64,000 nucleotides of DNA from Octopus bimaculoides (GCF_001194135.2 NC_068994.1:2905482-2969481); one strand, 5' to 3'; positions 6,571-57,872 are shown, counted from the stretch's first letter. Notes: a model not told the origin generated them from the letters alone. Translations and numbers: made by a program.

Positions 6571-8979
6571 ATGAAAAACAAAGAAATGACAAGGACAAGT
6601 TTGCTGGTATGTATTTTATACCAAGTACTGTCTCTCATTGTCTCAATAGACATCATTTACCATGTCAATGAAGAAGGCGCTCCTCAAACCTATATAGGAG
6701 ACATTGCTATTGACTCAAACTTATCACACCCTCTTACACATCGTCAGGATACTCTCATTACATTTACACAACTACGAAGGAAAGTGGCTAGTGGTTCTCA
6801 ATTATTCAATGTCACCAACTCTGGGAAACTATACACTACACAAACATTGGATACTGAGTCTTTGTGTACATACAACAAAGAATGTTTTAAAATTGTTAAA
6901 GTTGCAGTGAGGAAAGCAGAAACATTTATTACGGTTTTAAGGATAAAAGTCATCATAGAAGACATTAATGATCATCAACCAGAGTTCCCAGAGGATCTAA
7001 TTAAAATAGAATTTGGTGAAACTGATGCAAAAGGATCGACAAAATCAATACCAAATGCTGTGGATAAAGACATTGGTCTTCTTAATTCTAAGATCACATA
7101 TACACTCAAAGACAAAAGTAAGAAATTCTCATTATCTATATCTAATGAATTTGATGGAATGAATATATTGGAAATTATACTTGAAGAAAAATTAGACAGA
7201 GAATTAAAAGACACATACATGTTACAGTTGCTTGCAAAAGATAGTGGCTCCCCACCAAAACAAGGTATTCTGAACATAGAAATCTCTGTTACAGATGTCA
7301 ATGATAACAGACCTATGTTTTCTCAACAAACATACAATATTTCTATCAGTGATACACATCATATCACCTCTCCTGTTTTTGTTTTATCAGCAACAGATTT
7401 AGATTCTGGTCAAAATGGTGACATCACTTATAACTTTCACCAAAAAACAAGGCCTTACATTAAAACAAATTTCAAACTGAAACCAAATGGAGAGATCCTT
7501 CTAAATGAGAATTTTTACAGAAATAAGCAGCAAATATATAAATTATATATTGAAGCAAAAGATAAAGGAAGACCATCTTTAAGTTCTACTGCCACACTAA
7601 TTATCAATGTAATAAGCAATCAAAATAATGCTCCAATTATAGATATAGATTTTGTATCCCCTTTAACAGAGAGTTCTACAGCTATTTCAGAAGCAAGTAA
7701 AATTGGGAGTTTTATAGCTTATGTTATGGTCACTGACACTGATAGTGGACCTAATGGACAAATTAAATGCAATATTCATCATAAAATGTTCCAGCTTTCT
7801 CATATGAGTTCTAAAGAATATAAAATATTGGTCAAAGAACCTCTTGACAGAGAAATTAAAGACCACTATGGCGTTTCTATTGAATGTCATGACTTGGGAT
7901 CACCTCCATTAAAGACTAAGAAACAGTTCTCTGTCAAAGTAACTGATGTCAACGATGTAGAACCACATTTTACCAAAGAGACATTCCAATTCCTCACCTA
8001 TGAAAACCAGAAAGTTGACTTCCCTATTGGCTTCATCAATGCTACAGACCCTGATCTTGGAGATGGAGGTCAACTTACATATTCTATCATCAATGATAAC
8101 AACAATCATAACATTCCTTTCCAACTGACAAAATATGGATTTATTTCTACATCACAATCAATAGATCGAGAAGTGAAGGACATCTATAATTTACAGGTTT
8201 TAGTCAAAGACAATGGAATACCTTCTCTGAATAATACTGCCAATATTCTTATAGAGATTCTAGATAAAAATGATAATGCTCCATATTTTATCTTTCCTAA
8301 AAATGACCCTTACAATCTAGATGTCCACTACCATCCACACAGTAAGAAGGACATCACAATTCTGAAAGCATCTGACAAAGACACTGGAAACAATGCTTTC
8401 CTCACATATGGAATACTGAGATCCAATGATAAAAACCTGTTTACAGTGAACTCACACACTGGTGTGTTATCTTTCTCTCGCACAGTTTACCAAAATGATG
8501 CAGGAACATATGAGCTGCAGTTTATAGTGAAAGACGGTGGTACTCCAGTTCAATCAGCAACAACTGCTATCATACTAACACTGTTTGTTAGTAATGATAC
8601 ATCTCCAATGTTGACTGCTGTCCACTCAAAGTCTGGTAACAACCTTAATATGACTTGGATAATTATCATTGTAGCAGCAGCTGTAATACTGTCTGTGGCT
8701 ATTGTAGTGTCAATAACACTATGTGTTTTCAGATGTATCAATCACATTAATAATTCATCTACAACAACTGATAATCCAAAATTTCTTTCAAGGACTGAAA
8801 TGAGGCAAATATTGTATCAGACTAATAATCCTGTTGCAATAACTAGAAATGCAGAAGACATATTTAACAGAAATCTTCAATCAATAAACCCAAAATGCTC
8901 TTATTACTCAGACATGAAGCAGTCAGCTAATGAATGGAAATTCTCAACTACCCCCAGAAAATTACCACCAGTCCCAATG
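6571..8979 (+). CDS. Protocadherin A, large exon: signal peptide, EC1-EC6, TM, proximal cytoplasmic tail
   Basis: ORF with cadherin motifs (DINDHQPEF, LDRE, DVNDNRP, DVNDVEP, DKNDNAP), EC1 C-x5-C (LCTYNKEC) and TM WIIIIVAAAVILSVAIVVSITLCVF. Acceptor ttttcAG at 6547-6548; phase-0 donor ATG|gtatgt at 8980. The homologous start may be ATG 6586. Confidence 0.95.
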
Positions 8980-10001
8980 GTATGTATTCTTGTTAAAATA
9001 AACTGTTTATGAAGTTATCTTTACAAAGAGGAGTAAGGTTTTTTGATATTGTTTAAGCACATGTCAACCCTGATGGGAACAGACAAATCTGTGGTCAAAG
9101 TCAAGACCTTCTCATCTTTTTTGCATGGTATATTCAGGATCGAAGTGTTCAGTTCCTAAAAGAATGTGATGTAATTTGAAGGAGGGTTTACTTGCTATTT
9201 CTAGCTGGTCAAGCAACCCTATATCCAGGTTACGATGTAGATTATGCATATAGGAGATTGTAATAATTTAAAGTGAGGTAATCCATTAGAAGTGAGATTT
9301 TGGTACTGCTTGTCATTAAGAAAAGTAAATATGTAACCCCAATGTTGACTTTGAAGTATATGGTACTATGCCAAGGAAATAATAATAATATGTGAAATTC
9401 AGTCTCTCTTATAAAGACAAAACAGTAGTTAGAATTCATACTTTTAGCTCTAATGTCTGTATGTATTTATAATTTTAAATGACCGAACTCTTATAGCTAT
9501 GATAGTGTTACTATACTTCAGAATGTGATGTGCACCATTGGTAACATTTCAAAATGAATCTTTGATTCATTACTATAAAACAGAACAATATCTTAGCTTG
9601 ATTTTGGTTCTATAACTTTAAAAGTCTTCTATTAGTTTTAATTTAGGTATTCAATTGAGGTCCAGAAAATTCATGCCAACAATATATTGAGCAAAGACTT
9701 AAATTTTTAAGGAAGGCTTCCAGTGCACATGCAGATTTGTAGAGAAATAATGAAATGATTATTAATATAATATGAAATAATAAGGTGGTGAGCTAGCAGA
9801 ATCATTAGCATACCAGGCAAAATTCTTAGCAGCATTTTGTCCATTTTTATGTTCTGAGTTCAAATTATTTCGATAATTAAAAATATTCTCACCCTGATAA
9901 ACTGGATTGAGCTGAATATCAAAGATTAATATTAATTGTATGTTATACATTATGAATGTAATACTTTCAATTTATATTATTTTCTTTTCTTTTTTTTTTA
10001 G

Positions 10002-10161
10002 CATTGTAATGAGGATGAGACAATGAGTTCATCTGAACAAAAATGTTATAACAGCAGTATTATGACATCAAATAACCTGAATGATACATTATCTTCTCAT
10101 AAAGAACGGAAATGTGGTTGGAGTGATGGAGACATTACACATCAAACATCTGGAGCATCAG
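10002..10161 (+). CDS. Protocadherin A exon 2 (cytoplasmic)
   Basis: Poly-T AG acceptor, 160 nt, open in phase 0 (HCNEDETMSSSEQKC...QTSGAS), TCAG|gtaaat donor. Paralogous to 22284-22443. Confidence 0.85.
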
Positions 10162-10500
10162 GTAAATACAAAATAAATCATAAAATTGCAACAAGAATGT
10201 TAATGACATGGGAAAATGAATATCATAAGGAAATTGTTGTTTTTTTATAATGGAGAGTGAAATGTAGTATTCTGACCCATGTAGGGCAGTAACCCTGAAT
10301 AAGAACTAATGTAGATCGTAATGACACATCCAATTTATGCCAGCATTGAAAGAGGTTGAAAATGATAAGAGAACTTCATAGAATTATTATTTTCACAGGA
10401 ACAGAAAAATCATACACAATTAGTAGCTTCTCTAAAATTTTTATACATACATGTATCTTTCTCAACCCTGATCATTAGTAATTTTCATATACTTTTTCAG

Positions 10501-10580
10501 AATATGGCAACTACCGACCAAATATACTCCCGACCCCAAAGACTGTACAAGAGCAAGAAACGTATCTGGAGCCAGTATAA
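10501..10580 (+). CDS. Protocadherin A exon 3 (terminal)
   Basis: tttttcAG acceptor, phase 1. Reads (E)YGNYRPNILPTPKTVQEQETYLEPV*. Confidence 0.85.
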
Positions 10581-10974
10581 TGCAAACACAGTAACATCAG
10601 ATTTACTTTTTAATAACCAAAGAATCAACCCCTCAAATAATTCAATAGTGTATTAATAACATTCCATATAGCACTGTTTTCAATTAATCTTTTATTGAAA
10701 ACTCTTTAACAAATACTGAAGTTATAATTTTCCAATGAAGGTCATAGGGCTGATGCTAATTTTGGTGAGGTTTTCACTACTTTTTATTAAGTAAAGTATT
10801 TTTAGTATTAGCATTATATTATACATTGATAATACTAATAGATTTCAGTAGAGCTATATTGTGATGAATGAAAATAACTGCAGCAACTCTTTTCTTGAAA
10901 CTGGAATACAAGTATCCTGAGACAAGGTACATAACTCTTCTAGAGCTTCAAATACTGAAGCAGTATGCCGTCTT

Positions 10975-11110
10975 TACATTCTGAGTTTAAATTCCGCCAA
11001 GGTCGACTTTGCCTTTCATCCTTTCATCTTTTGTGTACTGGGGTCGATGTAATCGACTGACCCCCTCCCTAAAAATTTCGGGCCTTGTGCCTAGAGTAGA
11101 AAAGAATATA
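10975..11110 (+). mobile_element. tRNA-derived SINE fragment (family with gactttgcctttcatcc core)
   Basis: B-box-like gagtttaaattccgcc, followed by a body shared with ~13292, 23048, 30535, 30700, 55400 (minus) and 61630. Confidence 0.65.
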
Positions 11111-11694
11111 TATTTTCCTTTGATGACATTTTACCTGTCAAGAGCAAAACATGACTTTCTGCATATATATATATATATATATTCTTCCATTTGACAGCAT
11201 GAATTTCCACATTTTCAAACAGACTTCAAACTAAGAAGATAATGCCTAAATATGGCACTAAAATAAAATGACAAAAAATCATAGAATCAAGCTCAATGAT
11301 TTTAAAACTATGGACATAATAATTTTTTACATGAGAATTATAGAAGGCAATCTTTATATAAACATAGATGAGTAGATATGCCTCTAGCAAAGATATTGGT
11401 AAAGTAAAGGAAAATGAATCTACACTATTCTTCTTCTTAACATTAAAATTATCTTTCAAATATAGCATTTTATCTAAATATCATTGCATTTATTTATTAT
11501 TGTATAGGTTTTGTTGGAAGAAATGTTAATGTATCAAATGTATCTAGCCTTATTACAAATGAGATATGAAAAGCAATCCCAAATACACATAACCACACAT
11601 ACATTCACATATTAAATATATTTTAAAAACATTTTAAATACATTTATGAATTCACATTTCATTGGAACTCATTTTTGAAATATGACTGCAATTT

Positions 11695-11784
11695 GTGAAC
11701 AACAGCAGCAGTTACAGAAGAAGACTCCTACGAGATACATGTTTTTCTTCTTTTACGACAACAACAAAAGATTAAACAATGAAG
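11695..11784 (+). promoter_or_regulatory. Orphan leader exon L2
   Basis: gcagttac, cgagatacatgt and gattaaacaATGAAG|gtaaat match L1. The CTGACTCACA motif is not recognisable. Confidence 0.6.
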
Positions 11785-11965
11785 GTAAATCTATTTTTAT
11801 ATATATACTGTCTTTTCTCATCTCAGATAATCTTTGGAGAGCAAAGTTCTTTTCATAGCTTTTAAAACAGGATAATAGCTAAAACATTTCTCATACACAC
11901 ACACACATATATGAACATGAACAAATATATTTATTCATACAAATATATATATATATATATATATA

Positions 11966-12810
11966 TCATCATCATCATCATCATCATCATCACCATCATC
12001 ATCATTTAACGTTCATTTTCCATGCTGGCTGGGGTTGGGCAGTGTGACTGAGGACTGACAAGCCAATAAGCTGCACCAGGCTCCAATCTGATCTGGCAAG
12101 GTTTCTACAGCTGGATGCCTTCCCTAATGCCAACCACTCCAAGAGTGCAGTGGGTGCTTTTTATGTGCCACCAGAACAGGAGCTGGTCAGGTAGCACTGG
12201 CATCAACCACATTCAGATGGTGCTTTTTACATGCCACCAGCACATCAGCCAGTTGGGAGGCACTGGCATTGATCACATTTGGATGGTCCTTTTTACATGC
12301 CACTGGCATGGACAGCTAGTCAGGCAGCACTGGCATCGACTCATGCTTGAATGGTGCTTATTATGTGCCACCAGCATAGTGCCAGTCAGGCAGCAGCATC
12401 ACTGGCATTGGCCACAACTACGATTTCAATTTTGATTTCGATTTTACTTGATTCAATAGGTCTTGTCAAGTGTAGCATATTGCCCAACGATTCAAGGGTA
12501 CTTTTAAACGGGCTGATTACGCAACAGTGGTATCAGCCATGGCTGTGATCTCACTTTACTTACCAGGTCTTCTCAATCACAGCATATCTCCAAAGGTCTC
12601 TCATTGCCTCTATGAGGCTCAACATTCAAAGGTCATGCTTCACCACCTCACCCCATGTCTTCCTGGGTTTCCCTCTTCCACAGGTTCCTTCCACTGTTAG
12701 GATGTGACACTTCTTCATACAGCTCTCCTCATCCATATGTAGCACATGACCATACCAGTGCAGACATCTCTCTTGCATACTACATCTGATGCTTCTTATG
12801 TCCCTGTACA
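11966..12810 (-). mobile_element. RTE-clade LINE 3' fragment with (CAT)n tail
   Basis: Minus ORF ...LHWYGHVLHMDEESCMKKC...RGKPRKTWGEVVKHDL is the typical RTE ORF C-terminus. It is followed by a 3' UTR with internal repeats and a trinucleotide tail. Confidence 0.8.
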
Positions 12811-12882
12811 TGGCTCGCACAGCTCTCACTGTATTTATAATCATAAGTACAACATCCTAACCACTAAACTACACACCTCCAC

Positions 12883-13838: not shown

Positions 13839-14219
13839 CATTAAGATAAGAATGTGGCAATGAGTCCTGCTGATCAAAAATGTTACGGTAGTATTGAAAC
13901 ATCAAACAACCTTAGTGAGACATTACCCTGGAACAAAGAATGGAACTATGTCTAGAATAAAGGAGACATTAAAAATCAAGCAATGGGAGCATCAGGTAAT
14001 AATGAAATAAACAAAAAAATTCAAACAACAAATAAAAATTTCCCTTAAGAAACATAACCTAGATATATTCAAATATTTGTCATGGAAACAAATTAAAACA
14101 TCATTAAGTAGTTTCCCCTTATTCTTATATAATTTCCAGAATATAGCAAGTACCAGCCAAACATACCTCTGACACCAAAGAATGAACAAGAACAAGAAAT
14201 CTATTCAGAGTTTATGTAG
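13839..14219 (+). pseudogene. Orphan Pcdh exon 2 (13839-13995) and exon 3 (14140-14219) with no ectodomain exon upstream
   Basis: Splice sites and phases are intact. Exon 2 has in-frame TAA (13842) and TAG (13953, where paralogs have TGG). Exon 3 reads (E)YSKYQPNIPLTPKNEQEQEIYSEFM*. Confidence 0.8.
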
Positions 14220-17074: not shown

Positions 17075-17351
17075 ACTTAGAAAGCATCCAGTCCACACTG
17101 TAAAGTGGTTGGCATTTGGAAGGGCACCCAGCTGTGAAAACCTTGGCCAAACTGACCTCACTTGTGCCACGTAAAAAGTATTAAGTCCATTCTGTTGGGT
17201 CGTTGGTGTTAGGAAGGGCATCCAGCTGTAAAAATCTTGCCAAAACAGTCACAGATATCTGGTACAGGCTTCTGCCAGGCCGGCTCCTGTCAAACCATCC
17301 TACCCATGCTAGCATGGAAGGTGGACGTTAAACAATGATGATGATGATGAA
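17075..17351 (+). mobile_element. RTE 3'-UTR-derived repeat ending in (ATG)n
   Basis: Reverse complement of the 5470 and 12000 copies (gcatccagctgtaaaaatcttgcc...catgctagcatggaagg...atgatgatg). Confidence 0.65.
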
Positions 17352-18261: not shown

Positions 18262-20658
18262 ATGACAAAAGAGAGTGGCTTATTCATCTGTCTACTACAT
18301 ACTTTACTACACTGTGTTCTAAGTGTAGATATCACTTACCATGTCAACGAAGAAGATAGTCCTCACACTTACATAGGAAACATTGCTGCTGATTCTAACT
18401 TTTCTCAATCTCTCAAACATCATCAAGGAACTCCCATTACATTTACACAGTTGCAAAGAACAATGTCAATGGGATCTCACTTATTCAATGTCACTAATTC
18501 TGGGAAACTATACACTACACACACACTTGATGCTGAGTCTCTATGCATTTACAAAAAAGAATGTTTTAAAATTGTCAAAGTAGCTGTTAGGAAAGAAGAA
18601 GCATTCATAAAAATATTAAAGATAAAGATAATAATTGATGATATTAACGATAACCAACCAGAGTTTCCAGAAGATCAAATTAAATTAGAATTTGATGAAA
18701 CTGAAGCAAAAGGTTCAACAAAATCAATACCAAATGCTGTGGATAAAGACATTGGTATTTTCAATTCTAACATCACATATGAACTGAAAGATAAAAGTAA
18801 TACATTTATATTATCAATATTCAAAGAGTTTGATGGAATGAAAATACTTAAAATAGCACTAGAAGGTAAGTTAGACAGAGAATTAAAAGACACTTATATG
18901 TTACAGTTAGTTGCAAAGGATAGTGGTTCTCCTCCCAAAGAAGATACTCTGAACATAGAGATATCTGTTATTGATGTCAATGATAATAGACCTATGTTTT
19001 CTCAGCAGATGTACAACATCACAATTAGTGATACACATCATACATCTTCTCCTGTTTTTGTTTTATCAGCTACAGACTTAGATTCAGGTCAAAATGGTAA
19101 TATCACATATAACTTTTATCAAAAAACAAGCTCTTATCTCAAAACACATTTCAAACTGAAACCAGATGGAGAGATATTCCTAAATGAGGATTTTTACAGA
19201 AATAATCAACAAAAATATAAATTATATATTCAAGCCAAGGATAGAGGAAAACCATCTTTAAGTTCTTCAGCCACACTAATTATCAATGTAATAAGCAATC
19301 AAAATAATCTTCCAAATATAAACATAGATTTTGTATCACCTTTAACAGTGAATTCTGCTGCTATTTCAGAAGCAAGTAAAATTGGGAGTTTTATAGCTTA
19401 TGTTATGGTCACTGACACTGATAGTGGACCTAATGGACAAATTAAATGCAATATTCACCATAAAATGTTCCAGCTTTCTAATATGGGGTCTAAAGAGTAT
19501 AAAATATTAGTCAAAGAACCTCTTGACAGAGAAACTATAGATCATTATGTTGTTTCTATTGAATGTCATGATATGGGATCACCTCCATTGAAGACTAAGA
19601 AACAGTTTTCTGTCAAAGTAACTGATGTCAATGATGTAGAACCACATTTTACCAAAGAGACATTCCAATTCCTCACCTATGAAAACCAGAAAGTTGACTT
19701 CCCTATTGGCTTCATCAATGCTACAGACCCTGATCTTGGAGATGGAGGCCAACTTACATATTCTATCATCAATGAGAACAAAAATGATAACATTCCTTTC
19801 CAACTGACAAAATATGGATTTATTTCTACATCACAATCAATAGATCGAGAAGTAAAAGACATCTATAATTTACAGGTTTTAGTCAAAGATAATGGGACAC
19901 CATCACTGAATAACACTGCCAATATTCTTATAGAGATTCTAGATAAAAATGATAATGCTCCATATTTTATATTTCCTAATAATGATCCTTACAATCTAGA
20001 TGTCCACTACCATCCACACAGTAAGAAGGACATCTCAATTCTGAAAGCATCTGACAAAGATTCTGGAAACAATGCTTTCCTCACATATGGAATACTGAGA
20101 TCCAATGATAAAAACCTGTTTACAGTGAACTCACACACTGGTGTGTTATCTTTCTCTCGCACAGTTTACCAAAATGATGCAGGAACATATGAGCTGCAGT
20201 TTATAGTGAAAGACGGTGGTACTCCAGTTCAATCAGCAACAACTGCTATCATATTAACACTGTTTGTTAGTAATGATACATCTCCAATGTTAACTGCTGT
20301 CCACTCAAAGTCTGGTAACAACCTGAATATGACTTGGATAATTATTATTGTAGCAGCAGCTGTAATACTATCTGTGGCCATTGTAGTGTCAATAACACTA
20401 TGTGTTTTCAGATGTATTAATCATATTAATAATTCACAAACAACAAAAAATAATCCAAAATTTCTTTCAAGGACTGAAATGAGGCAAATATTGTATCAGA
20501 CTAACAATCCTGTAGCAATAACTAGAAATGCAGAAGACATATTTAACAGAAATCTTCAGTCAATAAACCCCAAAACTTCCTATTACCCAGAGATGGAACA
20601 GCCAGCCAATGAATGGAAATTCTCAACAACACCTAGGCGATTGCCACCAGTTCCACAG
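18262..20658 (+). CDS. Protocadherin B, large exon (SP, EC1-EC6, TM, proximal tail)
   Basis: 810-aa ORF colinear with gene A. Phase-0 donor CAG|gtaaga at 20659; candidate acceptors at 18226 or 18243. Confidence 0.95.
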
Positions 20659-20767
20659 GTAAGATATTTATTTCCCATAGTTTTATTTAGGTAGCAATCA
20701 TTATTATAATTTTTGTGAAATTTGTCCTTCTGTAACATAATTTCTGGTGTGTTTACAACTACCCCTC

Positions 20768-22060: not shown

Positions 22061-22283
22061 GGATATGCTGGAGATGAAACATCTAACTCATGTAAGCATA
22101 GAAAAATTAATGTCAAATGTTGATAATGATAAAGGCACTGTATTCTGTATCTTCTATCTTTCCATGTTCCTTATAGTTGCATTGGAGATAGGGTATACAA
22201 ATATACTTTGTGCATCAAGTTGTAATGTAAAAACTTCATATAACTTGTTCCAAGTAACTTTCATGATTATTATTATCTGACAG

Positions 22284-22443
22284 CATTACAATAAGGATGT
22301 GGAAGAGAGTTCAACTGAACAAAAATGTTTTAATGCCAGCATTGTGACATCAAACAATCTAAATGATACACTACCCTCTCTTAAAGAACGGAACCGTGGG
22401 TGGAGTGAAAGTGACATTACATCTCAGAAATCTGGAGCATCAG
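22284..22443 (+). CDS. Protocadherin B exon 2
   Basis: gacAG acceptor, 160 nt, open (HYNKDVEESSTEQKC...QKSGAS), TCAG|gtaatt donor. Confidence 0.85.
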
Positions 22444-22757
22444 GTAATTATATAGTAATTCAGAACATTCTAATTGAAATTATATAGTAATTCAGAACAT
22501 TCTAATTTATGAAAGTAACAAATTTAATAAATAAATTCTGTAAATGAACTCCATAAATGAATTCAATAAATGAAATGAAATTTTATTATTTAGTAAAACA
22601 AAAAATAATTCAAAATAGCTTTTAGCATTTTAAAATAGTTAATGTTAGATTTTATTTCTAAGAAACAAAGAATCATATAGATTTAGTAAACAGTTTTACA
22701 AATGTACATGTCTCATGGAAAACAATACAGTAAACTACGTTTTTATATATTTTTCAG

Positions 22758-22837
22758 AATACAGTAACTATCGACCAAACATACCTCCTACACCAAAACA
22801 TGATCAAGAACAAGAAACTTATCTAGAGCCTGTATAG
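22758..22837 (+). CDS. Protocadherin B exon 3 (terminal)
   Basis: ttttcAG acceptor. Reads (E)YSNYRPNIPPTPKHDQEQETYLEPV*. Confidence 0.87.
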
Positions 22838-36422: not shown

Positions 36423-38822
36423 ATGATAAGAAATATTCTTTCACTATATTTGCTAGACATGCTTCTGTTCTCTGTTGTGTCTTTAGACATTACCTACCAT
36501 ATCAATGAAGAAAACAACCCTCATGCCTACATAGGAGATATTGCTGCTGATTCTAATATGTCACATTTTTTTAAACATCAACAACACAATCTTGTTACGT
36601 TTACACAATTACAAAGGAAGGTGTCAAGTGGCTCTCATCTATTTAATGTCACCAACTTAGGGAAACTTTACACAACTCAGACACTGGATGCTGAGTCTTT
36701 GTGTACAATCAACAAAGAATGTTTTAAAATTGTTAGGATAGCAGTTCGGAAAAGAAAAACTTATGTAAAGATTTTAAAAGTCAAAGTAATCATAAAAGAC
36801 ATCAATGATCATGGACCTGAGTTTCCAGAAAGTGAAATAAACTTGCAATTTGATGAAAATGATCGGGAAGGAACTAAAAAGCCCATTCCAAATGCTATTG
36901 ACAGAGATATTACCATTCAGAATTCTAGGATAGCTTATGAACTGAAGGAAAATATAGATGACCCATTTTCATTGTCTCTTTCAAAAGACTATGATGGGAC
37001 TTTCATACCTGAGATAGTTCTACAAGGTAAGTTGGATAGAGAAAGAAAGAAACACTATATGTTAAAGCTGATTGCTAAAGATAATGGTATACCACCAAAT
37101 GAAAATATTTTACATTTTCAGATATCTGTAACTGACTCTAATGATAATAAACCATTATTTTCTCAAAAAGTATATAACATTTCAATAATGAATAAACACC
37201 CCAAATCAAAACCAATTTTAGTTTTAGAAGCCACAGATTTAGATTCAGGGACAAACGGAAAGATTGCCTTTAATTATAGTCCCAAAACACCAATTGAAAT
37301 AAGAAAATATTTTGAGTTGAAAAAGGCATCTGGAGAACTGTTTGTAAATGAGTACTTCAAAATAGATACCAAAAAATCTTACAAGCTGTTTGTTGAGGCT
37401 AAAGATGGAGGGAAACCTCCCTTAAGTTCAACAACAGTGATTTTAATTTCTAAAGAAAGCAATCATAATATTGCTCCAAAAATTGATATAGACTTTGTGT
37501 TTCCTTTGTCAGAAAGTTCGACTGCTCTTTTAGAAGACATTAAAGTTGGTAGTTTTATTGCTTATGTCATAATTACTGACAATGATATCGAAGAAAATGG
37601 ACAGATTAATTGTAATTTGGAACATGAAACCTTTGGAATATTTGAAATGGGTTCACATGAATATAAAATGACCACAAAATGTCCTCTTGACAGAGAAACA
37701 AAAGATCGCTATGATATTGTACTTGTTTGCCAGGATATGGGATTTCCACCACTCAAATCAGAAAAACAATTTTCTATTGAAGTACTTGATGTCAATGATG
37801 TAGAGCCACATTTTACCAAAGAGACATTCCAATTCCTCACCTATGAAAACCAGAAAGTTGACTTCCCTATTGGCTTCATTAATGCTACAGACCCTGATCT
37901 TGGAGATGGAGGCCAACTTACATATTCTATCATCAATGATAACAACAATGATAACATTCCATTCCAACTGACAAAATATGGATTTATTTCTACATCACAA
38001 CCAATAGATCGAGAAATGAAAGACATCTACAAGTTCCAGGTCTTAGTGAAAGATAATGGAACACCTTCACTGAATGACACTGCTAATATTGTTATTGAGA
38101 TTCTAGATAAAAATGATAATGCTCCGTATTTTACGTTTCCTAATAATGACCCTTACAATCTAGATGTCCACTACCATCCACACAGTAAGAAGGACATCAC
38201 AATTCTGAAAGCATCTGACAAAGACACTGGAAACAATGCTTTCCTCACATATGGAATATTAAAATCTAACGATAAAAACATGCTTACAGTAAATTCTTAC
38301 ACTGGGGTATTATCATTCTCTCGTATAATTAATATAAATGATGCTGGAACGTATGAGCTACAGTTCATGGTGAAAGACAGTGGTACTCCAGTTCAATCAG
38401 CAACAACTGTTATCATGCTAACACTGCATGTTAGTAATGATACATTTCCAATGCAAGCTGCAACCCATCTCTTATCTGGCAATGACTTAAACATAATTTG
38501 GGTAATAATCATTGTTGCAGCAGCAGTAATATTATCTGTGGGTATTGTAGTTTGCTTAACAATGTGTGTTTTCAGATGTATTAATCACATTAAAAGTTCA
38601 CCTTCAACTTCAGATAATCATAAAATCTTGACAGGCTCTAAGATGAGGTCAATGCCATATGAAACTAAAAATCCTGTTGCATTTACAAGAAATACAGAAG
38701 ACACATATAACAGAAATTGTCAGACAATGAGCTCAAAAAGTCATTATTACCCTGAGATGGAAAAGACTATCAATGAATGCAAATTTTCAGCAACAGCTAG
38801 AAAACTTCCACCAATTCCACAG
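36423..38822 (+). CDS. Protocadherin C, large exon (SP, EC1-EC6, TM, proximal tail)
   Basis: 811-aa ORF with six cadherin repeats and a TM. Acceptor ttttAG at 36378-36379; phase-0 donor CAG|gttggt at 38823. More diverged from A/B except in EC5 to mid-EC6. Confidence 0.95.
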
Positions 38823-39371
38823 GTTGGTAAAATTTATAACATTCATTTTATAGCTTAAATTCCCAGACATTTTAACCTCATTCTATATTTTTTAAGATTT
38901 ACATTATATTTTAATTAATTTAATCCCTGAGCATATCATGTACTACATTCCAAATATAGATGCATTTTTAAGGCTTAATCAGAGTGTTTATTTCTAATAC
39001 TGAGTTTCAGACTTTTAACAACTGTGCCTCTACCCCAACTTTTGAAATATGATACCACTTGAAACAATGTACAGCATGCATATGATATATGAAATTAATA
39101 GTACAGAAAATTTAATCATTACCACAATAACACATACCAAAAATATAAACATATTTCTCAGATTTTTAGTTATATCTACCCTAGTTTCAAGGAATTAAAA
39201 CAATGATATAGTTGTATATATCATATTTCTAAAACTAACAAACTAGTCAAGACTAGACCAAGTCCCATTCATTTGGATTAAAATTTAGACTATGTTTGAA
39301 TAATGACATAGCAGGTCAGTAAAAAATCAGGAAATACCATTTCAAACAAAAATAAAAGAAACCTACTATTA

Positions 39372-42586: not shown

Positions 42587-42651
42587 TTATGAAAGAGATC
42601 TAATAAATATACCAATTAAAATACCATACTAAATGTTTCTTTTAACTTCAG

Positions 42652-42814
42652 CCTATTGATCAGCCAAGTAAGGAATCTTCTGATGAGCATGGAGAAAATA
42701 TATCTACTAAGAGTATCAATTATATGAGTAATACATTGCCATGCCAATGGCCTTCTGAAAGTACCTGGGATGAAAGATATACAAGAAATTTCAGTGATAT
42801 TTCTATTACATCAG
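42652..42814 (+). CDS. Protocadherin C exon 2
   Basis: cttcAG acceptor, 163 nt, open in phase 0 (PIDQPSKESSDEH...SNTLPCQW...ISITS), TCAG|gtaatt donor as in paralogs. Confidence 0.75.
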
Positions 42815-43417
42815 GTAATTTGTGAATTATATTCTATTTTTAAAGAGTTCTGTATGATCTTTAGCATTTCTCTTAGTTGTAATTAATTTCAAATGATTAA
42901 TGTGAAAATTGTAAAGTTCAAAATGAGTACTTTGACATAATGATAGAGTTTGATACTACAAAAGTAGTATACAACTACATTAGATTCATAAGAATAAATT
43001 TTGTTTGGTACAAAGGTGATCTAACATATTATTTCATATTTGTTTATTCACAAACTCTCATTGCACTTTAACATCTTCTGCTGCCTGATAGGTGTTAGTA
43101 TGTAAGAGAATAAGTTTACAAACCAGACTGCTAGCACTCAGTACCAAAACATATGCGTATGTAATATATTACATATATTTTTATTTAATCTAAGGATTGA
43201 CAGTATCCATTGATTCTGCCAGCTCTCATACACTGATGAAACGGATGAGGCTAATACTCAGCTTGAACTTCTGTAGATTACTGTCAGAATACAGCAGTTC
43301 TGGGAAGAAAGAATTGCGTGAAATGATTTGTAGAAAATTTTCTTAAAAATAATTGGCTAAAATATGTAATCCAATGATTTGAGCATAAGTTTTTTTATTT
43401 TATTTTATATTTTACAG

Positions 43418-43509
43418 AGTTTGATGAATCTAAACCAGATGTTCCTCCAAAACCAAATCTTCTACAAAACCAAGATACATATTTAGAGCCAATGTATCTA
43501 ACAAAATAA
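43418..43509 (+). CDS. Protocadherin C exon 3 (terminal)
   Basis: tttacAG acceptor, phase 1. Reads (E)FDESKPDVPPKPNLLQNQDTYLEPMYLTK*. Confidence 0.8.
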
Positions 43510-53326: not shown

Positions 53327-53700
53327 TTTACTAGTTTCAGTCATTTGACTGCGGCCATGCTGGAGCACCGCCTTTAGTCGAGAAAATCGACCCCAGGACT
53401 TATTCTTTGTAAGCCTAGTACTTATTATATCGGTCTCTTTTTGCCGAACCGCTAAGTTACGGAGACATAAACACCAACATCGGTTGTCAAGCGATGTTTG
53501 TTGGTGGGGGGGGGGACAAACACAGACACAAACACACACACATATATATATATACATATATACGACGGGCTTCTTTCAGTTTCCGTCTACCAAATCCACT
53601 CACAAGGCTTTGGTCGGCCCGAGGCTATAGTAGAAGACACTTGCCCAAAGTGCCACGCAGTGGGACTGAACCCGGAACCATGTGGTTGGTAAGCAAACAT
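53327..53700 (-). mobile_element. tRNA-derived SINE, near full length
   Basis: Minus-strand head with GGTTCAGTCCC B-box-like motif, internal (TG)/(TA) tract and poly-A-like end. Homologous to 47077 and 55995. Confidence 0.75.
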
Positions 53701-53749
53701 CAGTTACATACATGGGATTAATATATTCCTACAGGTGATACTAAAACGA

Positions 53750-54368
53750 AAAGGCAATGTAATATTTCCATTAAAGCAGACGATACTAAATGATACGGCA
53801 ATTTAATATTTCCATTAAAGCAGACGATATTAAAATAATATGGCAATTTAATATTTCCATTAAAGCAGACGATACTAAAACAATATGGCAATTTAATATT
53901 TTCATTAAAGCAGACGATATCAAAACAATATGGAAATTTAATATTTCTATTAAAGCAGACGATAGTAAAACAATATGGCAGTTTAATATTTCCATTGAAG
54001 CAGACGATACTAAAAGAATATGGTAATTTAATATTTCCATTAAAGGAAACGATATTAAAACAATAGACAATTTAATATTTTTATTAAAGCAGACGATACT
54101 AAAACAATATGGTAATTTCCATTAAAGAAAACGATATTAAAACAATATAACAGTTTAATATTTCCATTAAAACAGACGATATTAAAACAAAATGGCAATT
54201 TAATATTTCCATTAAAGCAGACGATATTAAAACAGTATAACAATTTAATATTTCCATTAAAGCAGACGATATTAAAACAAAATGGCAATTTAATATTTCC
54301 TTTAAAGCAGACGATATTAAAACAGTATAACAATTTAATATTTCCATTAAAGCAGACGACACTAAAAC
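53750..54368. repeat. 45-bp minisatellite (~13-14 copies)
   Basis: gcagacgat recurs every 45 nt (53821, 53866, 53911...). ORF-track translations show a 15-aa period. Confidence 0.92.
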
Positions 54369-55994
54369 TGCTCAAAAGTTGGGAATGGAAGTACTTCGAA
54401 TTTTTTTAAGCAAAACTATATTTAAACACCGTTAATGAATGTTAGTAAAAAAACAAGTAACGAAAAACTTATGGAGGTTCTCTGAATTTCTTTTTAGCAC
54501 TTTATAAAGACTTTTTTTTTTTCGATTTATGAATAAAACTTTTTTTGATTATCAAACTATTAAATATTAACAAAACGTTGTTAAAAAAAGAAAAAAACTC
54601 ATGGAAGTCCTTCGAAAAATTTCTTTTTAGCATTTAATAAAGAATCTCCCCGCCCCCCTTTTTTTTAGATTATCAAGCATTGTGTTAGAAATTAACAAAA
54701 CTCATACGATGTATCAGAAATGAATATCATTACTCACCCTTTGCTTTTACATGTAAATATCCATATTGAAAACATTTTCCTAAATAAATTTTGCGACGAT
54801 ATAAAATTAGAAATCTAAGGAGACAAATTTTACGAGCCTTCATTGTCAGCGTTTCTCTCAGCAATTGCGAACGGAACGCAGACGACAAATGTTGCAAGGG
54901 AGATGACTCTTGGTTTTTTTTTTAGATTCCAGATCATTTTTAAATATATGTGTATTTTTATTAATATTTAGCAGAGGGTTTTCGTGCGTTTAAGTACCAA
55001 TGTATGAAATTCTCGGTGCTTGAGTCACTCTGTTACTTTTGTTAAATATTAATAAAACTATACGTGTGTTCATATTCTGTGTTCTATTTTTCTGTCTGCA
55101 TCACCATACCTTCCATTCCCTCTGTTCCCCTGTTTGTTTCAGTCATTTGACTGCGGTTATGCTGGGGCACCACCTTTAATATATATATATATAATATGTG
55201 TGTGTGTATAGGTATATATTCTTTTATTTGTTTCAGTCGTTTGACTGTGGCCATGCTAGAGCACTGACTTAAAGGGTTTTAGTCAAATTAAGTTTAAAAT
55301 GTCGATTTTGTTTCATCCTTTCTAAAGATACTAACTTTTTTTTTTAAATTTCTGCTTGCACAATCCACATATCCACTTCCCCATATTGTTTTCACATTTT
55401 AGCACAAGATCAGCAATTTGGGGGAAGGAGTAAGTTGATTGCATCGACCCCAGCGCTCAACTGGTATTTATTTTATCTACCCTAAAAGGATGAATGGCAA
55501 GGTCAACCTCAGCGGATGCTGCTAAGCATTTTGCCAAACATAAAAACGATTCTGCCAGCTCACAGCCTTTGTCCACTCTTCCATACTAAATACACTTTGG
55601 CATTGCTATAAATATTTTTTTATCCACTTGTTGGTGATAAAAGTTTCTGTAACTACAAAAACACTGCTCCCAGAATTCAATGTATGTGTGAGGGTGTAGA
55701 AATTTCTGTCTTTGGTACGCACATGCACATTTAGCTTACCAGGATTGGTCAGACTCTAACTCTCTGATAGAAAAGCTTGAGGTATGTTGTTAATTGAATT
55801 TGTGGCAAGCATTTGCTCAAACTTTCTACAATCAGCATTTCCAAAAGGTGTGCTCATCTTAAACAAACCTTCATCACTGTAAAAAAAAATCATCTGTGTG
55901 GGTAGTCTAATGGCTATAACATTAACCATTAGACTGAAGAATCCACTAAAATATATGTGAGTGGGTGTGTATGAGTATTATATGTATGTGTGTG

Positions 55995-56300
55995 GTGCAG
56001 GCATAGCTGTGTGGTTGGAAGTTTTCTTCCCAACCATGTGGCTCCAGGTTCACTCCCAATATGTGGCACCGTGAGTAAATGTCTTCTGCTATAGCCTTGG
56101 GCTGACAAAAGCCTTGTTAGTGGATTTGGTAGCTGGAAACTGAAAGAAGCCAGCCGTGTGTTTGTATCTATGTTTGTTTCCCACCACCTCTTGACAACCG
56201 GTGTTGGTGTATTTACATTCCATATTTCAGCAAAAGAGACTAATAGATTAAGTACTAGGCTTAAAAAAGAAGACAATAAGTACTGGGGTTAGTTAGTTCA
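55995..56300 (+). mobile_element. tRNA-derived SINE immediately upstream of the surviving part of pseudogene D
   Basis: ggtgcaggcatagctgtgtggttgg head, ggttcactccc B-box-like motif, body shared with 53327. Confidence 0.7.
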
Positions 56301-56419
56301 ATTATTTTAAAATTCTATCTCCAAGCTAGGTTTTCTAGAGAATTTTTTGTAACTGCTTTATTAATGTTACATTTCTTCAGATTATAGTGTCTGTCACAAT
56401 TCACTGATCATTATTCTGT

Positions 56420-57872
56420 TTACTTTTTTAGCTTGTGGTACAATAATTAATAATGATATTGGACACAATGGAGATGTTACATTCTCTTATTAAAAGACAC
56501 CTTGACAAAGAAACATCTGTTGTATATCATGACATGGAATCATCTCCATTGAAGACTAAGAAACAGTTTTCTGTCAAAGTAACTGATGTCAACGATGTAG
56601 AACCACATTTTACCAAAGAGACATTCCAATTCCTCACCTATGAAAACCAGAAAGTTGACTTCCCTATTGGCTTCATCAATGCTACAGACCCTGATCTTGG
56701 AGATGGAGGCCAACTTACATATTCCATCATCAATGATAACAACAATGATAACATTCCTTTCCAACTGACAAAATATGGATTTATTTCTACATCACAATCA
56801 ATAGATCGAGAAATGAAAGACATCTATAAGTTCAAGGTCTTAGTGAAAGATAATGGAACACCTTCTCTCAATGACACTGCCAATATTGTTATTGAGATTC
56901 TAGATAAAAACGATAATGCTCCCTATTTCATCTTTCCTAATAATGACCCTTACAATCTAGATGTCCACTACCATCCACACAGTAAGAAGGACATCACAAT
57001 TCTGAAAGCATCTGACAAAGACACTGGAAACAATGCTTTCCTCACATATGGAATACTGAAATCCATCATCATCATCATTTCATGTCTGTTTTCCATGCTG
57101 GCATGGGTTGCACAGTTTGACAGGAGCTGTCCAGACTCCATTTGTCTGTTTTGGCAAGATTTCTACAGCTGGATGTCCTACTTAGTACCAGCCACTTTAC
57201 AGAGTGTGCTGGGTGTTGCACTTACACGCTGATGTGCTATCTTTCGCGGACAATTTACCAAAATGTTTCAGAAACATATGAGCTGACCTTAACAAGTGAT
57301 GTAATAGCATTACTAGCACAATAGAACATGGTATTGACTTATAACACCATTTACTCTACTTTGTAATATATTATGGTTGCATAACAAAATACCATGTTCT
57401 TAAAGTCATTAATATTAGCTGGAGTTTATAGTGGTACTCCAGTTCAATCAGCAACAGCTGCTATCATACTAACATTGTTTGTTAGTAATGATACATCTCC
57501 AATGTTGACTGCTGTCCCATTCCAGTCTGGTAACAACCTGAATATGACTTGGATAATTATCATTGTAGCAGCAGCTGTAATACTATCTGTGGCTATTGTA
57601 GTGTCCATAACACTGTGTATTTTTAGATGTATTAATCACAAAATAACTCACCTACAACAACAGATAATCCAAACTTTCTCTCTCAGACTGAGATGAGACA
57701 ATTACTGTATCAGACTAACAATCCTGTTGCAATAACGAGAAATGCAGAAGAGATATTTAACCGAAATCTTCAGACAATAAAATCTAAAAGTCAGTTTTTT
57801 CTGGAGATGGAACAGACACCAGATGAGTGGAAATTCTCCACAACACAAAGGAGACTTCCACCTGTGCCTCAG
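56420..57872 (+). pseudogene. Protocadherin D pseudogene: decayed EC4, near-pristine EC5 to mid-EC6, insertions, TM, frameshifted tail; EC1-EC3 not found
   Basis: 56420-56530 is degenerate EC4 (FLACGTIINNDIGHNG). 56540-57064 is almost identical to paralogs. RTE-tail insertion at 57065-57217, degenerate EC6 at 57218-57285, unrelated insert to ~57428, 1-nt frameshift near 57641. Ends RRLPPVPQ with a CAG|gtaaat donor. Confidence 0.85.
57065..57217 (-). mobile_element. (CAT)n-tailed RTE 3'-end copy inserted into the Pcdh D coding exon
   Basis: catcatcatcatttcatgtctgttttccatgctggcatgggtt matches the 5470 and 12000 copies and interrupts EC6 after YGILKS. Confidence 0.8.

What the first reader, a model, noticed from the sequence alone, without database searches (positions are those of the whole stretch)
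7940..57064. EC5-to-mid-EC6 block homogenised at DNA level across all four paralogs while EC1-EC3 diverge
From the EC4/EC5 linker (DVNDVEP) to FLTYGIL in EC6, the segments A ~7945-8420, B ~19625-20100, C ~37787-38262 and D ~56585-57060 are nearly identical including synonymous sites. The first ~130 bp differ at only a few positions. Gene C switches abruptly from diverged to near-identical exactly at the linker and back again in mid-EC6. A and B share a longer tract (EC4 through TM). This pattern indicates gene conversion rather than purifying selection alone. In vertebrate clustered Pcdhs, EC1-EC4 give trans-homophilic specificity and EC5-EC6 give promiscuous cis pairing (established), so a shared cis module with variable recognition domains would be convergent combinatorial logic (inference).
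Basis: partly seen in the sequence, partly recalled or inferred. Interest (0 to 1): 0.75.

Follow-up and report, generated by a model that had tools for sequence, protein, structure and literature searches.

The report
Gene-converted shared module, octopus protocadherins
In this octopus protocadherin gene array the DNA for the membrane-proximal part of each protein (EC5, EC6 and the membrane anchor) is kept nearly identical between neighbouring genes by copying from one gene to another. The outer domains diverge freely, which repeats independently a pattern known from vertebrate clustered protocadherins.

Summary
The window is a tandem protocadherin array of Octopus bimaculoides. It holds three intact genes (A, B, C; each a ~2.4-kb exon plus two small private 3' exons) and D, a 5'-truncated, repeat-disrupted, frameshifted pseudogene.

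Between A and C, synonymous differences at amino-acid-conserved codons fall from 38% outside the block to 10% inside it (p=2e-11).

Syntenic loci from O. vulgaris and O. sinensis, and paralogs from Argonauta hians, show this is concerted evolution by gene conversion, not nucleotide-level constraint or an assembly artefact:
- Orthologs diverge in the block about as fast as elsewhere.
- The pseudogene's block is "younger" than its flanks.
- In quartets of two subfamilies × two genera, EC2-EC4 and the cytoplasmic tail group by subfamily (94:7 and 38:3 sites). The module groups by genus (43:0.5).

The real unit is EC5+EC6+TM (~800 bp, A coordinates ~7930-8738). Both of its boundaries are shared by Octopus and Argonauta.

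Vertebrate clustered protocadherins show the same EC5/EC6 homogenisation. For cephalopods, gene conversion had only been suggested in general terms.

The proposed role as a shared cis-assembly module is an untested analogy.

The parts
6571..8985 (+). Gene A, large exon 1 (signal peptide, EC1-EC6, TM, start of cytoplasmic tail). The ORF itself runs to 9012, past the splice donor.
   Evidence: ORF. Pfam Cadherin x5 plus Cadherin_2. The annotated O. bimaculoides protein P0137 maps at 99.9% to 6571-8985.
10002..10577 (+). Gene A private 3' exons 2 (10002-10178) and 3 (10497-10577).
   Evidence: tblastn of the P0137 C-terminus.
18262..20658 (+). Gene B, large exon 1 (ORF to 20694).
   Evidence: P0141 maps at 100%.
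22281..22834 (+). Gene B private 3' exons 2 (22281-22442) and 3 (22754-22834).
36423..38822 (+). Gene C, large exon 1 (ORF to 38858). It belongs to a more divergent subfamily, 66% amino-acid identity to A and B.
   Evidence: P0130 maps at 100%.
42649..43506 (+). Gene C private 3' exons 2 (42649-42813) and 3 (43414-43506).
56486..57887 (+). D, a 5'-truncated protocadherin pseudogene. 56516-57065 aligns without gaps to A 7876-8425. The remainder is 83% identical to A, with a 10-bp deletion and 1-bp indels.
   Evidence: D-private substitutions are 3/484 in the block vs 24/479 downstream.
57066..57216 (.). First insertion interrupting D in mid-EC6. It resembles the dispersed repeat at 17188-17346 on the opposite strand.
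57286..57411 (.). Second insertion interrupting D.
   Evidence: Gap between the D-A alignment pieces 57217-57285 and 57412-57884.
7942..8738 (+). Homogenised EC5-EC6-TM module in gene A. The 5' boundary lies at 7927-7944 and the 3' boundary at ~8738-8747.
   Evidence: Sliding identity, dS by domain, boundaries at nucleotide level, quartet site patterns.
19621..20417 (+). The same module in gene B (A coordinate + 11679).
37787..38254 (+). Conversion tract in gene C (A 7942-8409). Only this part of the module is shared by C, and both flanks are diverged.
   Evidence: The same boundaries occur in the O. vulgaris and O. sinensis orthologs.
56582..57065 (+). Module fragment inside pseudogene D. It has no indels and is 98.7% identical to A over A 7942-8170.
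8171..8270 (+). Dimorphic stretch at the end of EC5 ('EC5b'; B 19850-19949, C 38016-38115, D 56811-56910). It has an A/B-type and a C/D-type haplotype.
   Evidence: dS is 0.37-0.55 between the types and 0.03 within the C/Ov9 type.

Best explanation
**What it is.** The window is part of the tandem, head-to-tail protocadherin array of Octopus bimaculoides. An ~800-bp stretch of each large exon encodes EC5, EC6 and the transmembrane helix. Interlocus (non-allelic) gene conversion keeps this stretch nearly identical among paralogs, including paralogs of different subfamilies and at least one pseudogene. EC1(part)-EC4 and the cytoplasmic tail keep their old, subfamily-specific sequences.

**How it works.**
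- Shown: internal patches are copied non-reciprocally between paralogs. Tracts are bounded on both sides, so a single unequal crossover cannot explain them.
- Shown: the process has run independently in the Octopus and Argonauta lineages. It continued after O. bimaculoides split from O. vulgaris.
- Inferred: tracts stop at the EC4/EC5 linker and just after the TM for two possible reasons. The flanks are too diverged (dS ~1 or more) to support heteroduplex. Alternatively, or in addition, imports of foreign EC1-EC4 or foreign tails are selected against.
- Inferred: high identity inside the module in turn favours further conversion, so the state maintains itself.

**Likely function (inferred by analogy only, about 40% likely).** The common module is a shared membrane-proximal platform, for example for cis association. 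The diverged EC1-EC4 carry recognition specificity, as in vertebrate clustered protocadherins.
For: **1. Synonymous identity is confined to the tract.** Fisher p=1.6e-11. dS for O. bimaculoides A/B vs C is 1.1-2.8 in EC1-EC4 and 0.09-0.10 in EC5a/EC6a.

**2. There is no special nucleotide constraint.**
- Ortholog identity in the block is 96.5% for A and 97.1% for C. In EC1-EC4 it is 94.4% and 98.3%.
- Six of the 9 differences between the near-identical O. vulgaris and O. sinensis C genes lie in 8052-8355.

**3. Pseudogene D serves as a neutral control.** D-private substitutions are 3/484 in the block vs 24/479 downstream (p=2e-5). The block has no indels, while the rest has several.

**4. Trees conflict between segments.** Orthology clades get 100/100/100% bootstrap in EC1-3. 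A's clade gets 0% in the block and in EC6b-TM.

**5. A/B quartets, O. bimaculoides vs O. vulgaris.**
- EC1-3: 136 orthology, 1 concerted, 1 control site.
- EC4 to cytoplasmic tail: 25 orthology, 15 concerted, 1 control site. Seven of the concerted sites cluster at 8721-8792.

**6. Two subfamilies × two genera (subfamily/genus/control site patterns).**
- EC2-3: 94/7/8
- EC4: 38/3/3
- Module: 0.5/43/0.1
- Cytoplasmic tail: 15/2/1
- Thirty-three of the 35 sites fixed between all Argonauta and all O. vulgaris genes lie in 7935-8694.

**7. dS between the two Argonauta subfamilies.** EC2 1.75, EC3 2.27, EC4 0.96, EC5-TM 0.04-0.10, cytoplasmic tail 0.85.

**8. The pattern is reproduced elsewhere.** The same mosaic appears in three independent Octopus assemblies and in genes 200 kb away.

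**9. GC3 is raised where conversion is inferred.** It is 0.28-0.35 in EC5-EC6 vs 0.20-0.22 in EC2-EC4, as GC-biased conversion would give.

**10. There is vertebrate precedent.** Clustered protocadherins have their lowest dS in EC5/EC6, attributed to gene conversion (PMC4978886, citing Noonan 2004).
Against: - No conversion event is observed directly; everything is inferred from fixed differences.
- For gene C there is no clear post-speciation exchange with A or B: 1 concerted vs 2 control sites in the block. Its tract is therefore old, and the rate of conversion into C is low.
- dS in the module between genera (0.21-0.26) is lower than in EC2-4 of matched subfamilies (0.40-0.70). Some extra constraint, or non-orthology of the matched genes, cannot be excluded.
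- The GC3 excess could reflect codon usage rather than biased conversion.
- Nothing here tests the functional part (a cis platform). The closest solved structures include non-clustered delta-type protocadherins as well as gamma-B4. Sequence similarity therefore does not place these proteins with the cis-dimerising vertebrate clustered type.
Confidence: 0.88

Rival explanations
1. Purifying selection acts on the nucleotide sequence itself, for example an exonic regulatory element, an RNA structure or an overlapping feature. That selection, without any copying between genes, keeps the block identical.
For: The block is the most conserved part of the protein (dN 0.01-0.03). dS between genera is somewhat lower in the module than in EC2-4.
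Against: - Orthologs diverge in the block about as fast as elsewhere.
- The block holds most of the very recent O. vulgaris vs O. sinensis differences in C.
- All Argonauta paralogs share 33 substitutions relative to all O. vulgaris paralogs inside the module. The sequence is therefore free to change, but it changes in all copies together.
- A decayed pseudogene keeps a fresh block.
- There is no Rfam match in the window.
Confidence: 0.03
2. Assembly artefact: reads from different paralogs were collapsed or cross-polished, so the consensus looks identical in the most similar region.
For: The window has three 10-N gaps and a 210-bp exact duplicate next to two of them (21-230 = 1418-1627). Local scaffolding is therefore imperfect.
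Against: - The same mosaic, with the same boundaries and copy-specific differences, is present in separate assemblies of O. sinensis, O. vulgaris and Argonauta hians.
- The copies in the window are not identical. They differ at 4-6% of sites, in phylogenetically sensible patterns.
Confidence: 0.02
3. The genes are all young duplicates, with an age equal to the module's dS. EC1-EC4 and the tails then diverged very fast under diversifying selection.
For: EC2-EC3 have the highest dN, 0.3-0.46 between subfamilies. This fits recognition domains under diversification.
Against: - Synonymous divergence in EC2-EC3 is 1.4-2.8, against 0.04-0.12 in the module. Selection on protein sequence cannot produce that.
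- The EC1-EC4 and tail subfamilies are shared between Octopus and Argonauta, so they predate that split. The module groups by genus.
Confidence: 0.02
4. Gene conversion is real but functionally meaningless. The module is simply the stretch that stayed similar enough for ectopic repair to continue. Its limits are set only by the divergence of the flanks, not by any need for a common module.
For: - Boundaries coincide with the points where flank identity drops to 65-70%.
- The pseudogene takes part too.
- Gene C has escaped homogenisation in EC6b-TM without losing its reading frame in three species.
- EC5b tolerates two haplotypes.
Against: - Both boundaries fall at domain limits, the EC4/EC5 linker and the end of the TM. 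They are the same in two genera that homogenise independently.
- The same domains are homogenised in vertebrate clustered protocadherins, where they form the cis interface (PMC4978886, PMC7811963).
- This rival concerns function only and is compatible with the mechanism proposed above.
Confidence: 0.4

Closest known systems
Domain-restricted gene conversion in vertebrate clustered protocadherins (Noonan et al. 2004, Genome Res 14:354, as summarised in PMC4978886)
   Same: - Tandem arrays of large exons each encode six EC domains plus a TM.
- dS is lowest in EC5/EC6 and highest in EC2/EC3, attributed to conversion that spares the specificity domains.
- Converted tracts make paralogs group by lineage.
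   Different: - The octopod array is an independent expansion, not orthologous to vertebrate clusters (PMC4978886 and PMC9068888, citing Albertin 2015).
- There are no shared constant exons; each gene has its own two 3' exons.
- The octopod module includes the TM and ends sharply before a subfamily-specific cytoplasmic tail.
- Its two boundaries are conserved between two genera.
- No shared promoter motif was seen.
General statements on cephalopod protocadherin clusters (Albertin et al. 2015 as quoted in PMC6339937; Albertin et al. 2022, PMC9068888)
   Same: [quoted passage not shown]
   Different: In the texts I could read and in three literature searches, I found none of the following:
- a domain-resolved analysis
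- tract boundaries
- a dS profile
- a cross-genus test
- pseudogene involvement

The full text of Albertin 2015 and of Wang & Ragsdale 2017 was not available to me.
Vertebrate clustered protocadherin cis/trans architecture (PMC7811963)
   Same: The proteins have the same six-EC layout. Query residues 30-668 align to the EC1-6 chains of 6VG1, 6E6B (gamma-B4) and 6VG4. The conserved membrane-proximal domains contrast with diversified distal domains.
   Different: Cis dimerisation through EC5-EC6/EC6 and trans binding through EC1-EC4 are demonstrated only for the vertebrate proteins. Nothing is known for the octopus proteins.
Pseudogene participation in gene conversion (for example chicken immunoglobulin pseudo-V donors; from general knowledge, not checked here)
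   Same: A non-functional fragment (D) exchanges sequence with functional neighbours. D shares the EC5b haplotype with C and a near-identical EC5a with A.
   Different: D is demonstrably an acceptor, since its block is fresh. Whether it also acts as a donor is unknown. There is no evidence for programmed or somatic conversion.

Membership tests
Protocadherin (six-EC, single-pass cadherin superfamily member) | Six tandem extracellular cadherin repeats. | tested here: met
   Pfam Cadherin in 5 stretches plus the N-terminal Cadherin_2. Residues 30-668 align end to end with EC1-6 chains 6VG1, 6E6B and 6VG4.
Protocadherin (six-EC, single-pass cadherin superfamily member) | A single transmembrane helix after EC6, and an ectodomain plus TM encoded by one large exon. 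| tested here: met
   A hydrophobic stretch WIIIIVAAAVILSVAIVVSITLCVF follows EC6. The ORFs of 810-813 codons are uninterrupted, and annotated proteins map to them.
Vertebrate-type clustered protocadherin locus (alpha/gamma organisation) | Tandem same-strand array of large variable exons. | tested here: met
   A, B, C and D all lie on the + strand, 12-20 kb apart. The syntenic arrays in O. vulgaris and Argonauta are arranged the same way.
Vertebrate-type clustered protocadherin locus (alpha/gamma organisation) | Variable exons spliced to one shared set of constant exons. | tested here: not met
   Each gene has its own exons 2 and 3, 1-4 kb downstream of its exon 1. This agrees with PMC9068888.
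Vertebrate-type clustered protocadherin locus (alpha/gamma organisation) | Conserved promoter element upstream of every variable exon. | tested here: inconclusive
   No 10-mer is shared by the 600-bp upstream regions beyond orthologs. That is a crude test only.
Vertebrate-type clustered protocadherin locus (alpha/gamma organisation) | Promiscuous cis dimerisation through EC5-EC6/EC6 and strict homophilic trans binding through EC1-EC4. | not testable with these tools
   Needs biophysics or cell assays. Only the conservation pattern is analogous (PMC7811963).
Concerted evolution by interlocus gene conversion | Synonymous divergence is sharply lower in the tract than in both flanks of the same genes. 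| tested here: met
Concerted evolution by interlocus gene conversion | The tract groups by lineage while the flanks group by orthology or subfamily. | tested here: met
   Bootstrap trees, A/B quartets, protein groups, two-genus quartets 0.5/43/0.1 vs 94/7/8.
Concerted evolution by interlocus gene conversion | Not explained by constraint: orthologs diverge normally and non-functional copies take part. | tested here: met
Concerted evolution by interlocus gene conversion | Direct observation of conversion events (pedigree, sperm typing or population haplotypes). | not testable with these tools
   No read or population data were available.

The most novel reading that the evidence does not exclude
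Octopods have independently evolved the two-part logic of vertebrate clustered protocadherins, without constant exons:
- A common EC5-EC6-TM module is kept uniform by gene conversion. Its boundaries have held since before Octopus and Argonauta split. It serves as a promiscuous cis-assembly and trafficking platform.
- It is joined to diversified EC1-EC4 recognition heads and to subfamily-specific cytoplasmic tails.
- The dimorphic end of EC5 (A-type vs C/D/Ov9-type) could define two cis-compatibility classes.
Probability: 0.35. Interest if true: 0.8.

Novelty: new member of a known kind. Interest (0 to 1): 0.6.

Why it matters
Octopus protocadherin expansion is a textbook case of convergence with vertebrate nervous-system complexity, yet nothing is known about how these proteins work.

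A conversion-maintained common EC5-EC6-TM module sits next to old, diverged EC1-EC4 domains. This is the same evolutionary footprint that, in vertebrates, marks the cis-assembly and trans-recognition halves of the molecule. It gives a concrete, testable prediction and exact domain boundaries for swap and truncation constructs.

It also carries a practical warning. Full-length trees of cephalopod protocadherins mix two histories, so orthology should be inferred from EC2-EC4 only.

Tried and rejected
1. A protein search with the 160-aa block alone returned only 6 short proteins. This was because of the word-index candidate step. It was useless for counting block carriers, but it revealed the window's source contig.
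2. P0123 and P0126 were looked up as possible O. vulgaris orthologs of D. Both lie elsewhere: L005 is upstream and L009 is 200 kb downstream. D's ortholog was never retrieved, because L007 ends about 7 kb short of it.
3. Noonan 2004 and Albertin 2015 could not be read. They are cited only through papers that quote them.
4. An Rfam scan of the window found nothing.
5. The search for a shared upstream motif found nothing beyond ortholog identity.
6. No clear 3' exons were found for D.
7. The wider protocadherin repertoire (second-tier hits) shows EC5/EC6 as the most similar domains, at 68-82% amino-acid identity. It does not show near-identity, so the near-identical module is a property of this subcluster, not of all octopus protocadherins.
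8. No domain shows dN/dS above 1, so positive selection on EC2-EC3 is not demonstrated.
9. I considered whether C's tract was copied from a D-like truncated fragment. C's 3' end at A 8409 is 16 bp from D's repeat insertion at A 8425, and C and D share the EC5b haplotype. This remains an untested idea, since the 5' ends do not coincide.

Full report
**What is in the window**

The 64-kb window is AT-rich (32% GC) and has three 10-N gaps. It carries three uninterrupted + strand ORFs of 813, 810 and 811 codons: A 6571-9012, B 18262-20694 and C 36423-38858. A fourth, 259-codon ORF lies at 56453-57232.

A and C match Pfam Cadherin five times plus the N-terminal Cadherin_2 domain. Residues 30-668 of A align end to end with solved six-EC protocadherin ectodomains: 6VG1, gamma-B4 6E6B and Pcdh10 6VG4.

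The best database relatives are 'protocadherin beta-15-like' proteins of Octopus sinensis, O. vulgaris and Argonauta hians. The D ORF, and the O. bimaculoides members of the A and C protein clusters, sit on a 60,576,134-bp O. bimaculoides contig. The window is therefore from that species.

Annotated O. bimaculoides proteins map exon 1 to the three ORFs. They add two small private 3' exons per gene: A 10002-10178 and 10497-10577, B 22281-22442 and 22754-22834, C 42649-42813 and 43414-43506. There are thus no shared constant exons, as stated for cephalopods in PMC9068888.

**What D is**

D is not a fourth full paralog. Homology to A starts at the end of EC4 (about 56486-56516). It runs without gaps to 57065 (= A 8425) and is then broken by a ~150-bp repeat (57066-57216). 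It resumes for 70 bp, is broken again (57286-57411), and continues to 57884 at only 83% identity, with a 10-bp deletion and 1-bp indels. 'EC1-EC3 diverge' therefore cannot be assessed for D.

**Check of the observation**

The four stated segments align at 94.5-96% identity.

A-C synonymous p-distance in 30-codon windows:

| A coordinates | pS |
|---|---|
| EC1-EC4 | 0.4-0.9 |
| 7957-8130 | 0.10-0.11 |
| 8137-8260 | 0.25-0.41 |
| 8272-8360 | 0.00-0.09 |
| from 8407 | 0.58 |

The test can be restricted to codons that encode the same amino acid in both genes. Synonymous differences are then 14/145 inside the block against 141/369 outside for A-C (p=1.6e-11), and 13/144 against 144/365 for B-C (p=1.3e-12). 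The longest synonymous-identical run in A-C (42 codons) was never reached in 20,000 permutations.

C's private differences stop at A coordinates 7942-7943, with one more at 7962. They resume at 8410. A and B share a longer similar stretch from mid-EC4 to the TM.

**Related loci**

I fetched the syntenic loci listed here.

| Locus | Species | Content |
|---|---|---|
| L008 | O. sinensis | A ortholog |
| L001 | O. sinensis | C ortholog |
| L002 | O. vulgaris | A ortholog |
| L006 | O. vulgaris | B ortholog |
| L007 | O. vulgaris | C ortholog |
| L003-L005 | O. vulgaris | six further intact paralogs upstream, plus one fragmentary and one end-truncated copy in L005 |
| L009 | O. vulgaris | two intact genes and one frameshifted copy of another subfamily, 200 kb downstream |
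| L010, L011 | Argonauta hians | three genes from each of two subfamilies |

Every one of these genes carries the block. Among the 11 Octopus genes first compared, nucleotide identity is 93-98.5% in the block against 67-95% in EC1-EC4.

The L009 genes are only 55-74% identical to A in EC2-EC3. They are 94-100% identical over 7950-8149 and 8250-8549, and 87% in 8150-8249. The same mosaic therefore appears in four independent assemblies, which disposes of an assembly artefact.

**Constraint or conversion?**

Four results argue against nucleotide-level constraint.

1. *Orthologs diverge in the block about as fast as elsewhere.* Identity for A is 96.5% in the block and 94.4% in EC1-4. For C it is 97.1% and 98.3%.
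2. *Recent differences concentrate in the block.* O. vulgaris and O. sinensis are about 99.8% identical in EC1-3. Six of the nine differences in gene C lie in 8052-8355, and several match states of other paralogs. Five of 16 differences in gene A cluster in 7800-7914.
3. *Pseudogene D has a fresh block.* D has 3 private substitutions in 484 block positions against 24 in 479 downstream (p=2e-5) and 4 in 66 just upstream. The block has no indels. A decaying pseudogene can keep a fresh internal patch only if that patch has been overwritten.
4. *The sequence does change, but in all copies together.* This is shown in the next two sections.

**Concerted evolution within Octopus**

Neighbour-joining trees give 100% bootstrap to all three orthology clades in EC1-3. 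A's clade gets 0% in the block and in EC6b-TM. In 7942-8170 the O. bimaculoides copies A, B and D group together at 70%.

Quartet site patterns for A and B in O. bimaculoides and O. vulgaris:

| Region | Orthology | Concerted | Control |
|---|---|---|---|
| EC1-3 | 136 | 1 | 1 |
| EC4 to cytoplasmic tail | 25 | 15 | 1 |

Seven of the concerted sites fall within 8721-8792. Exchange between A-like genes therefore continued after these species split.

For C the block holds only 14-15 orthology sites in 467 bp, against 83-85 in 316 bp of EC4. There is no excess of concerted sites. All three species also share C's tract boundaries. The main conversion into C is thus somewhat older than the species split.

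**Concerted evolution across genera**

At protein level, EC1-3, EC4 and the cytoplasmic tail group by subfamily across genera:
- In EC1-3, Octopus A-like vs Argonauta group 1 is 67.6% identical, against 59.2% for A-like vs other Octopus genes.
- The block and EC6b-TM instead group by genus. The two Argonauta groups are 97.0% and 98.8% identical to each other, and 84-92% identical to Octopus.

At DNA level, dS between the two Argonauta subfamilies:

| Domain | dS |
|---|---|
| EC2 | 1.75 |
| EC3 | 2.27 |
| EC4 | 0.96 |
| EC5 to TM | 0.04-0.10 |
| Cytoplasmic tail | 0.85 |

Same-subfamily genes of the two genera differ by dS 0.21-0.43 in the module.

Averaged over all quartets of the two subfamilies in the two genera (Argonauta groups 1 and 2; O. 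vulgaris A-like and L009-type genes), the site patterns are as follows:

| Region | Subfamily | Genus | Control |
|---|---|---|---|
| EC2-3 | 94 | 7 | 8 |
| EC4 | 38 | 3 | 3 |
| Module 7945-8738 | 0.5 | 43 | 0.1 |
| Cytoplasmic tail | 15 | 2 | 1 |

Of the 35 sites fixed between all six Argonauta genes and all ten O. vulgaris genes, 33 lie in 7935-8694. This is the classical signature of concerted evolution. The converted stretch is flanked on both sides by old sequence, so it reflects gene conversion, not a single unequal crossover.

**The real unit and its boundaries**

Subfamily-specific differences between the L009-type and A-like genes stop at A coordinate 7926. So do those between the two Argonauta subfamilies. 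C's differences stop at 7943. All three boundaries fall within 20 bp upstream of the EC4/EC5 linker.

At the 3' side the Argonauta subfamilies and the L009-type genes part company at about 8738-8747. That is just after the TM, at ...LCVFRC|INH.

The unit is therefore EC5+EC6+TM, about 800 bp.

Inside the unit, 8171-8270 (the end of EC5) is dimorphic in Octopus. There is an A-like type, and a type shared by C, D and the L009 genes. dS is 0.37-0.55 between the types and 0.03 within the second type. In Argonauta this stretch is uniform (dS 0.04).

GC3 is 0.28-0.35 in EC5-EC6 and 0.29-0.31 in EC1, against 0.20-0.22 in EC2-EC4. This would fit GC-biased conversion but is not proof of it.

**Mechanism**

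*Shown:* non-reciprocal copying of internal patches takes place between tandem paralogs. It includes a pseudogene, operates over at least 200 kb, recurs in two lineages, and is confined to one ~800-bp stretch.

*Inferred:* tracts end where flank identity falls to about 65-70%, too low for heteroduplex formation. Selection may also remove conversions that would import a foreign recognition head or tail. High identity within the module then favours further conversion.

*Inferred by analogy only:* the module may be a common membrane-proximal platform. In vertebrate clustered protocadherins EC5-EC6/EC6 form promiscuous cis dimers and EC1-EC4 give strict trans specificity (PMC7811963). dS is lowest in EC5/EC6 because of gene conversion (PMC4978886, citing Noonan et al. 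2004). Nothing here tests cis association in octopus, and no domain shows dN/dS above 1.

**Comparison with what is known, and novelty**

Domain-restricted conversion of EC5/EC6 is established in vertebrates. For cephalopods I found only general remarks:
- 'homogenization through gene conversion' (PMC9068888)

Searches combining octopus or cephalopod, protocadherin and gene conversion, EC6 or concerted evolution found no domain-resolved analysis. The held library is incomplete, and the Albertin 2015 and Noonan 2004 texts were unavailable.

I therefore rate this as a new member of a known kind. It is the same process acting on the same domains, in an independently expanded array with a different gene architecture:
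- private 3' exons
- a module that includes the TM
- subfamily-specific tails
- boundaries conserved between genera

**Limits**

- No conversion event is seen directly.
- D's ortholog was not retrieved.
- The matching of Argonauta and Octopus subfamilies rests on similarity, not synteny.
- The near-identical module is a property of this subcluster. More distant octopus protocadherins show EC5/EC6 merely as their most similar domains.

Noticed in passing
window 6649-6975 (EC1 of A; likewise B and C): EC1 also looks partly homogenised.
- Cross-subfamily dS is 0.5-0.7, against 1.4-2.3 in EC2-EC3.
- Two-genus quartet patterns are 7.7/8.1/2.7 for subfamily/genus/control.
- GC3 is raised to 0.29-0.31.

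This may be a second, weaker conversion zone at the 5' end of the exon.
   Followed up: partly
window 8509-8570 in A = about 38354-38415 in C: A second short patch where C approaches the A-like genes. Identity is 0.91-0.92 against 0.75-0.80 in the flanks, and pS is 0.17-0.24 against 0.5-0.6. It may be a separate small conversion tract in EC6.
   Followed up: no
window 38254 (C) and 57065 (D): C's tract ends at A coordinate 8409, 16 bp from the point (A 8425) where a repeat insertion breaks D's homology. C and D also share the EC5b haplotype, and O. vulgaris C is 99% identical to D in 8171-8270. A D-like truncated copy as the template for C's tract is possible but untested.
   Followed up: partly
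window 13839-13994 and 14154-14210: Orphan sequences resembling protocadherin exons 2 and 3 (47-63% amino-acid identity) lie between genes A and B, with no large exon nearby. They are probably the relic of a lost paralog.
   Followed up: no
window 21-230 and 1418-1627; N runs at 528-537, 1628-1637 and 62210-62219: A 210-bp stretch is duplicated at 100% identity, and the second copy ends exactly at an N gap. This looks like a scaffold-gap artefact of the assembly, outside the genes studied.
   Followed up: no
window 1192-1272: The last exon of the preceding paralog of the array. It is 92.6% identical in amino acids to B's exon 3. The window starts inside the 3' end of another gene.
   Followed up: no
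window 8701-8970 (cytoplasmic part of exon 1; B 20380-20649): B's orthologs in O. bimaculoides and O. vulgaris are only 85.2% identical here, against 97.4% in EC1-3. O. bimaculoides B is 89.3% identical to O. bimaculoides A in this part. This points to a discrete post-speciation replacement of part of the tail in one species.
   Followed up: partly
database proteins P0128, P0136, P0140 and P0142 (not in window coordinates): RefSeq models of 4355-5758 residues in O. bimaculoides and O. sinensis, named 'protocadherin Fat 4' or 'uncharacterized', fall in the same 90% clusters as single genes A and C. They look like gene-model fusions across tandem paralogs.
   Followed up: no
window 53737-54368: A 45-bp tandem repeat of about 14 copies, 85% matching, lies upstream of D. 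A dispersed repeat family occurs at 5469-5653, 11987-12174, 17161-17346 and inside D.
   Followed up: no
L005 9710-11251 (O. vulgaris): Another fragmentary protocadherin copy. It retains the module at 94-99% identity outside the dimorphic EC5b stretch (77%), apart from a ~34-bp deletion, and its other parts are degraded. Truncated copies that carry the module seem common in the array.
   Followed up: partly
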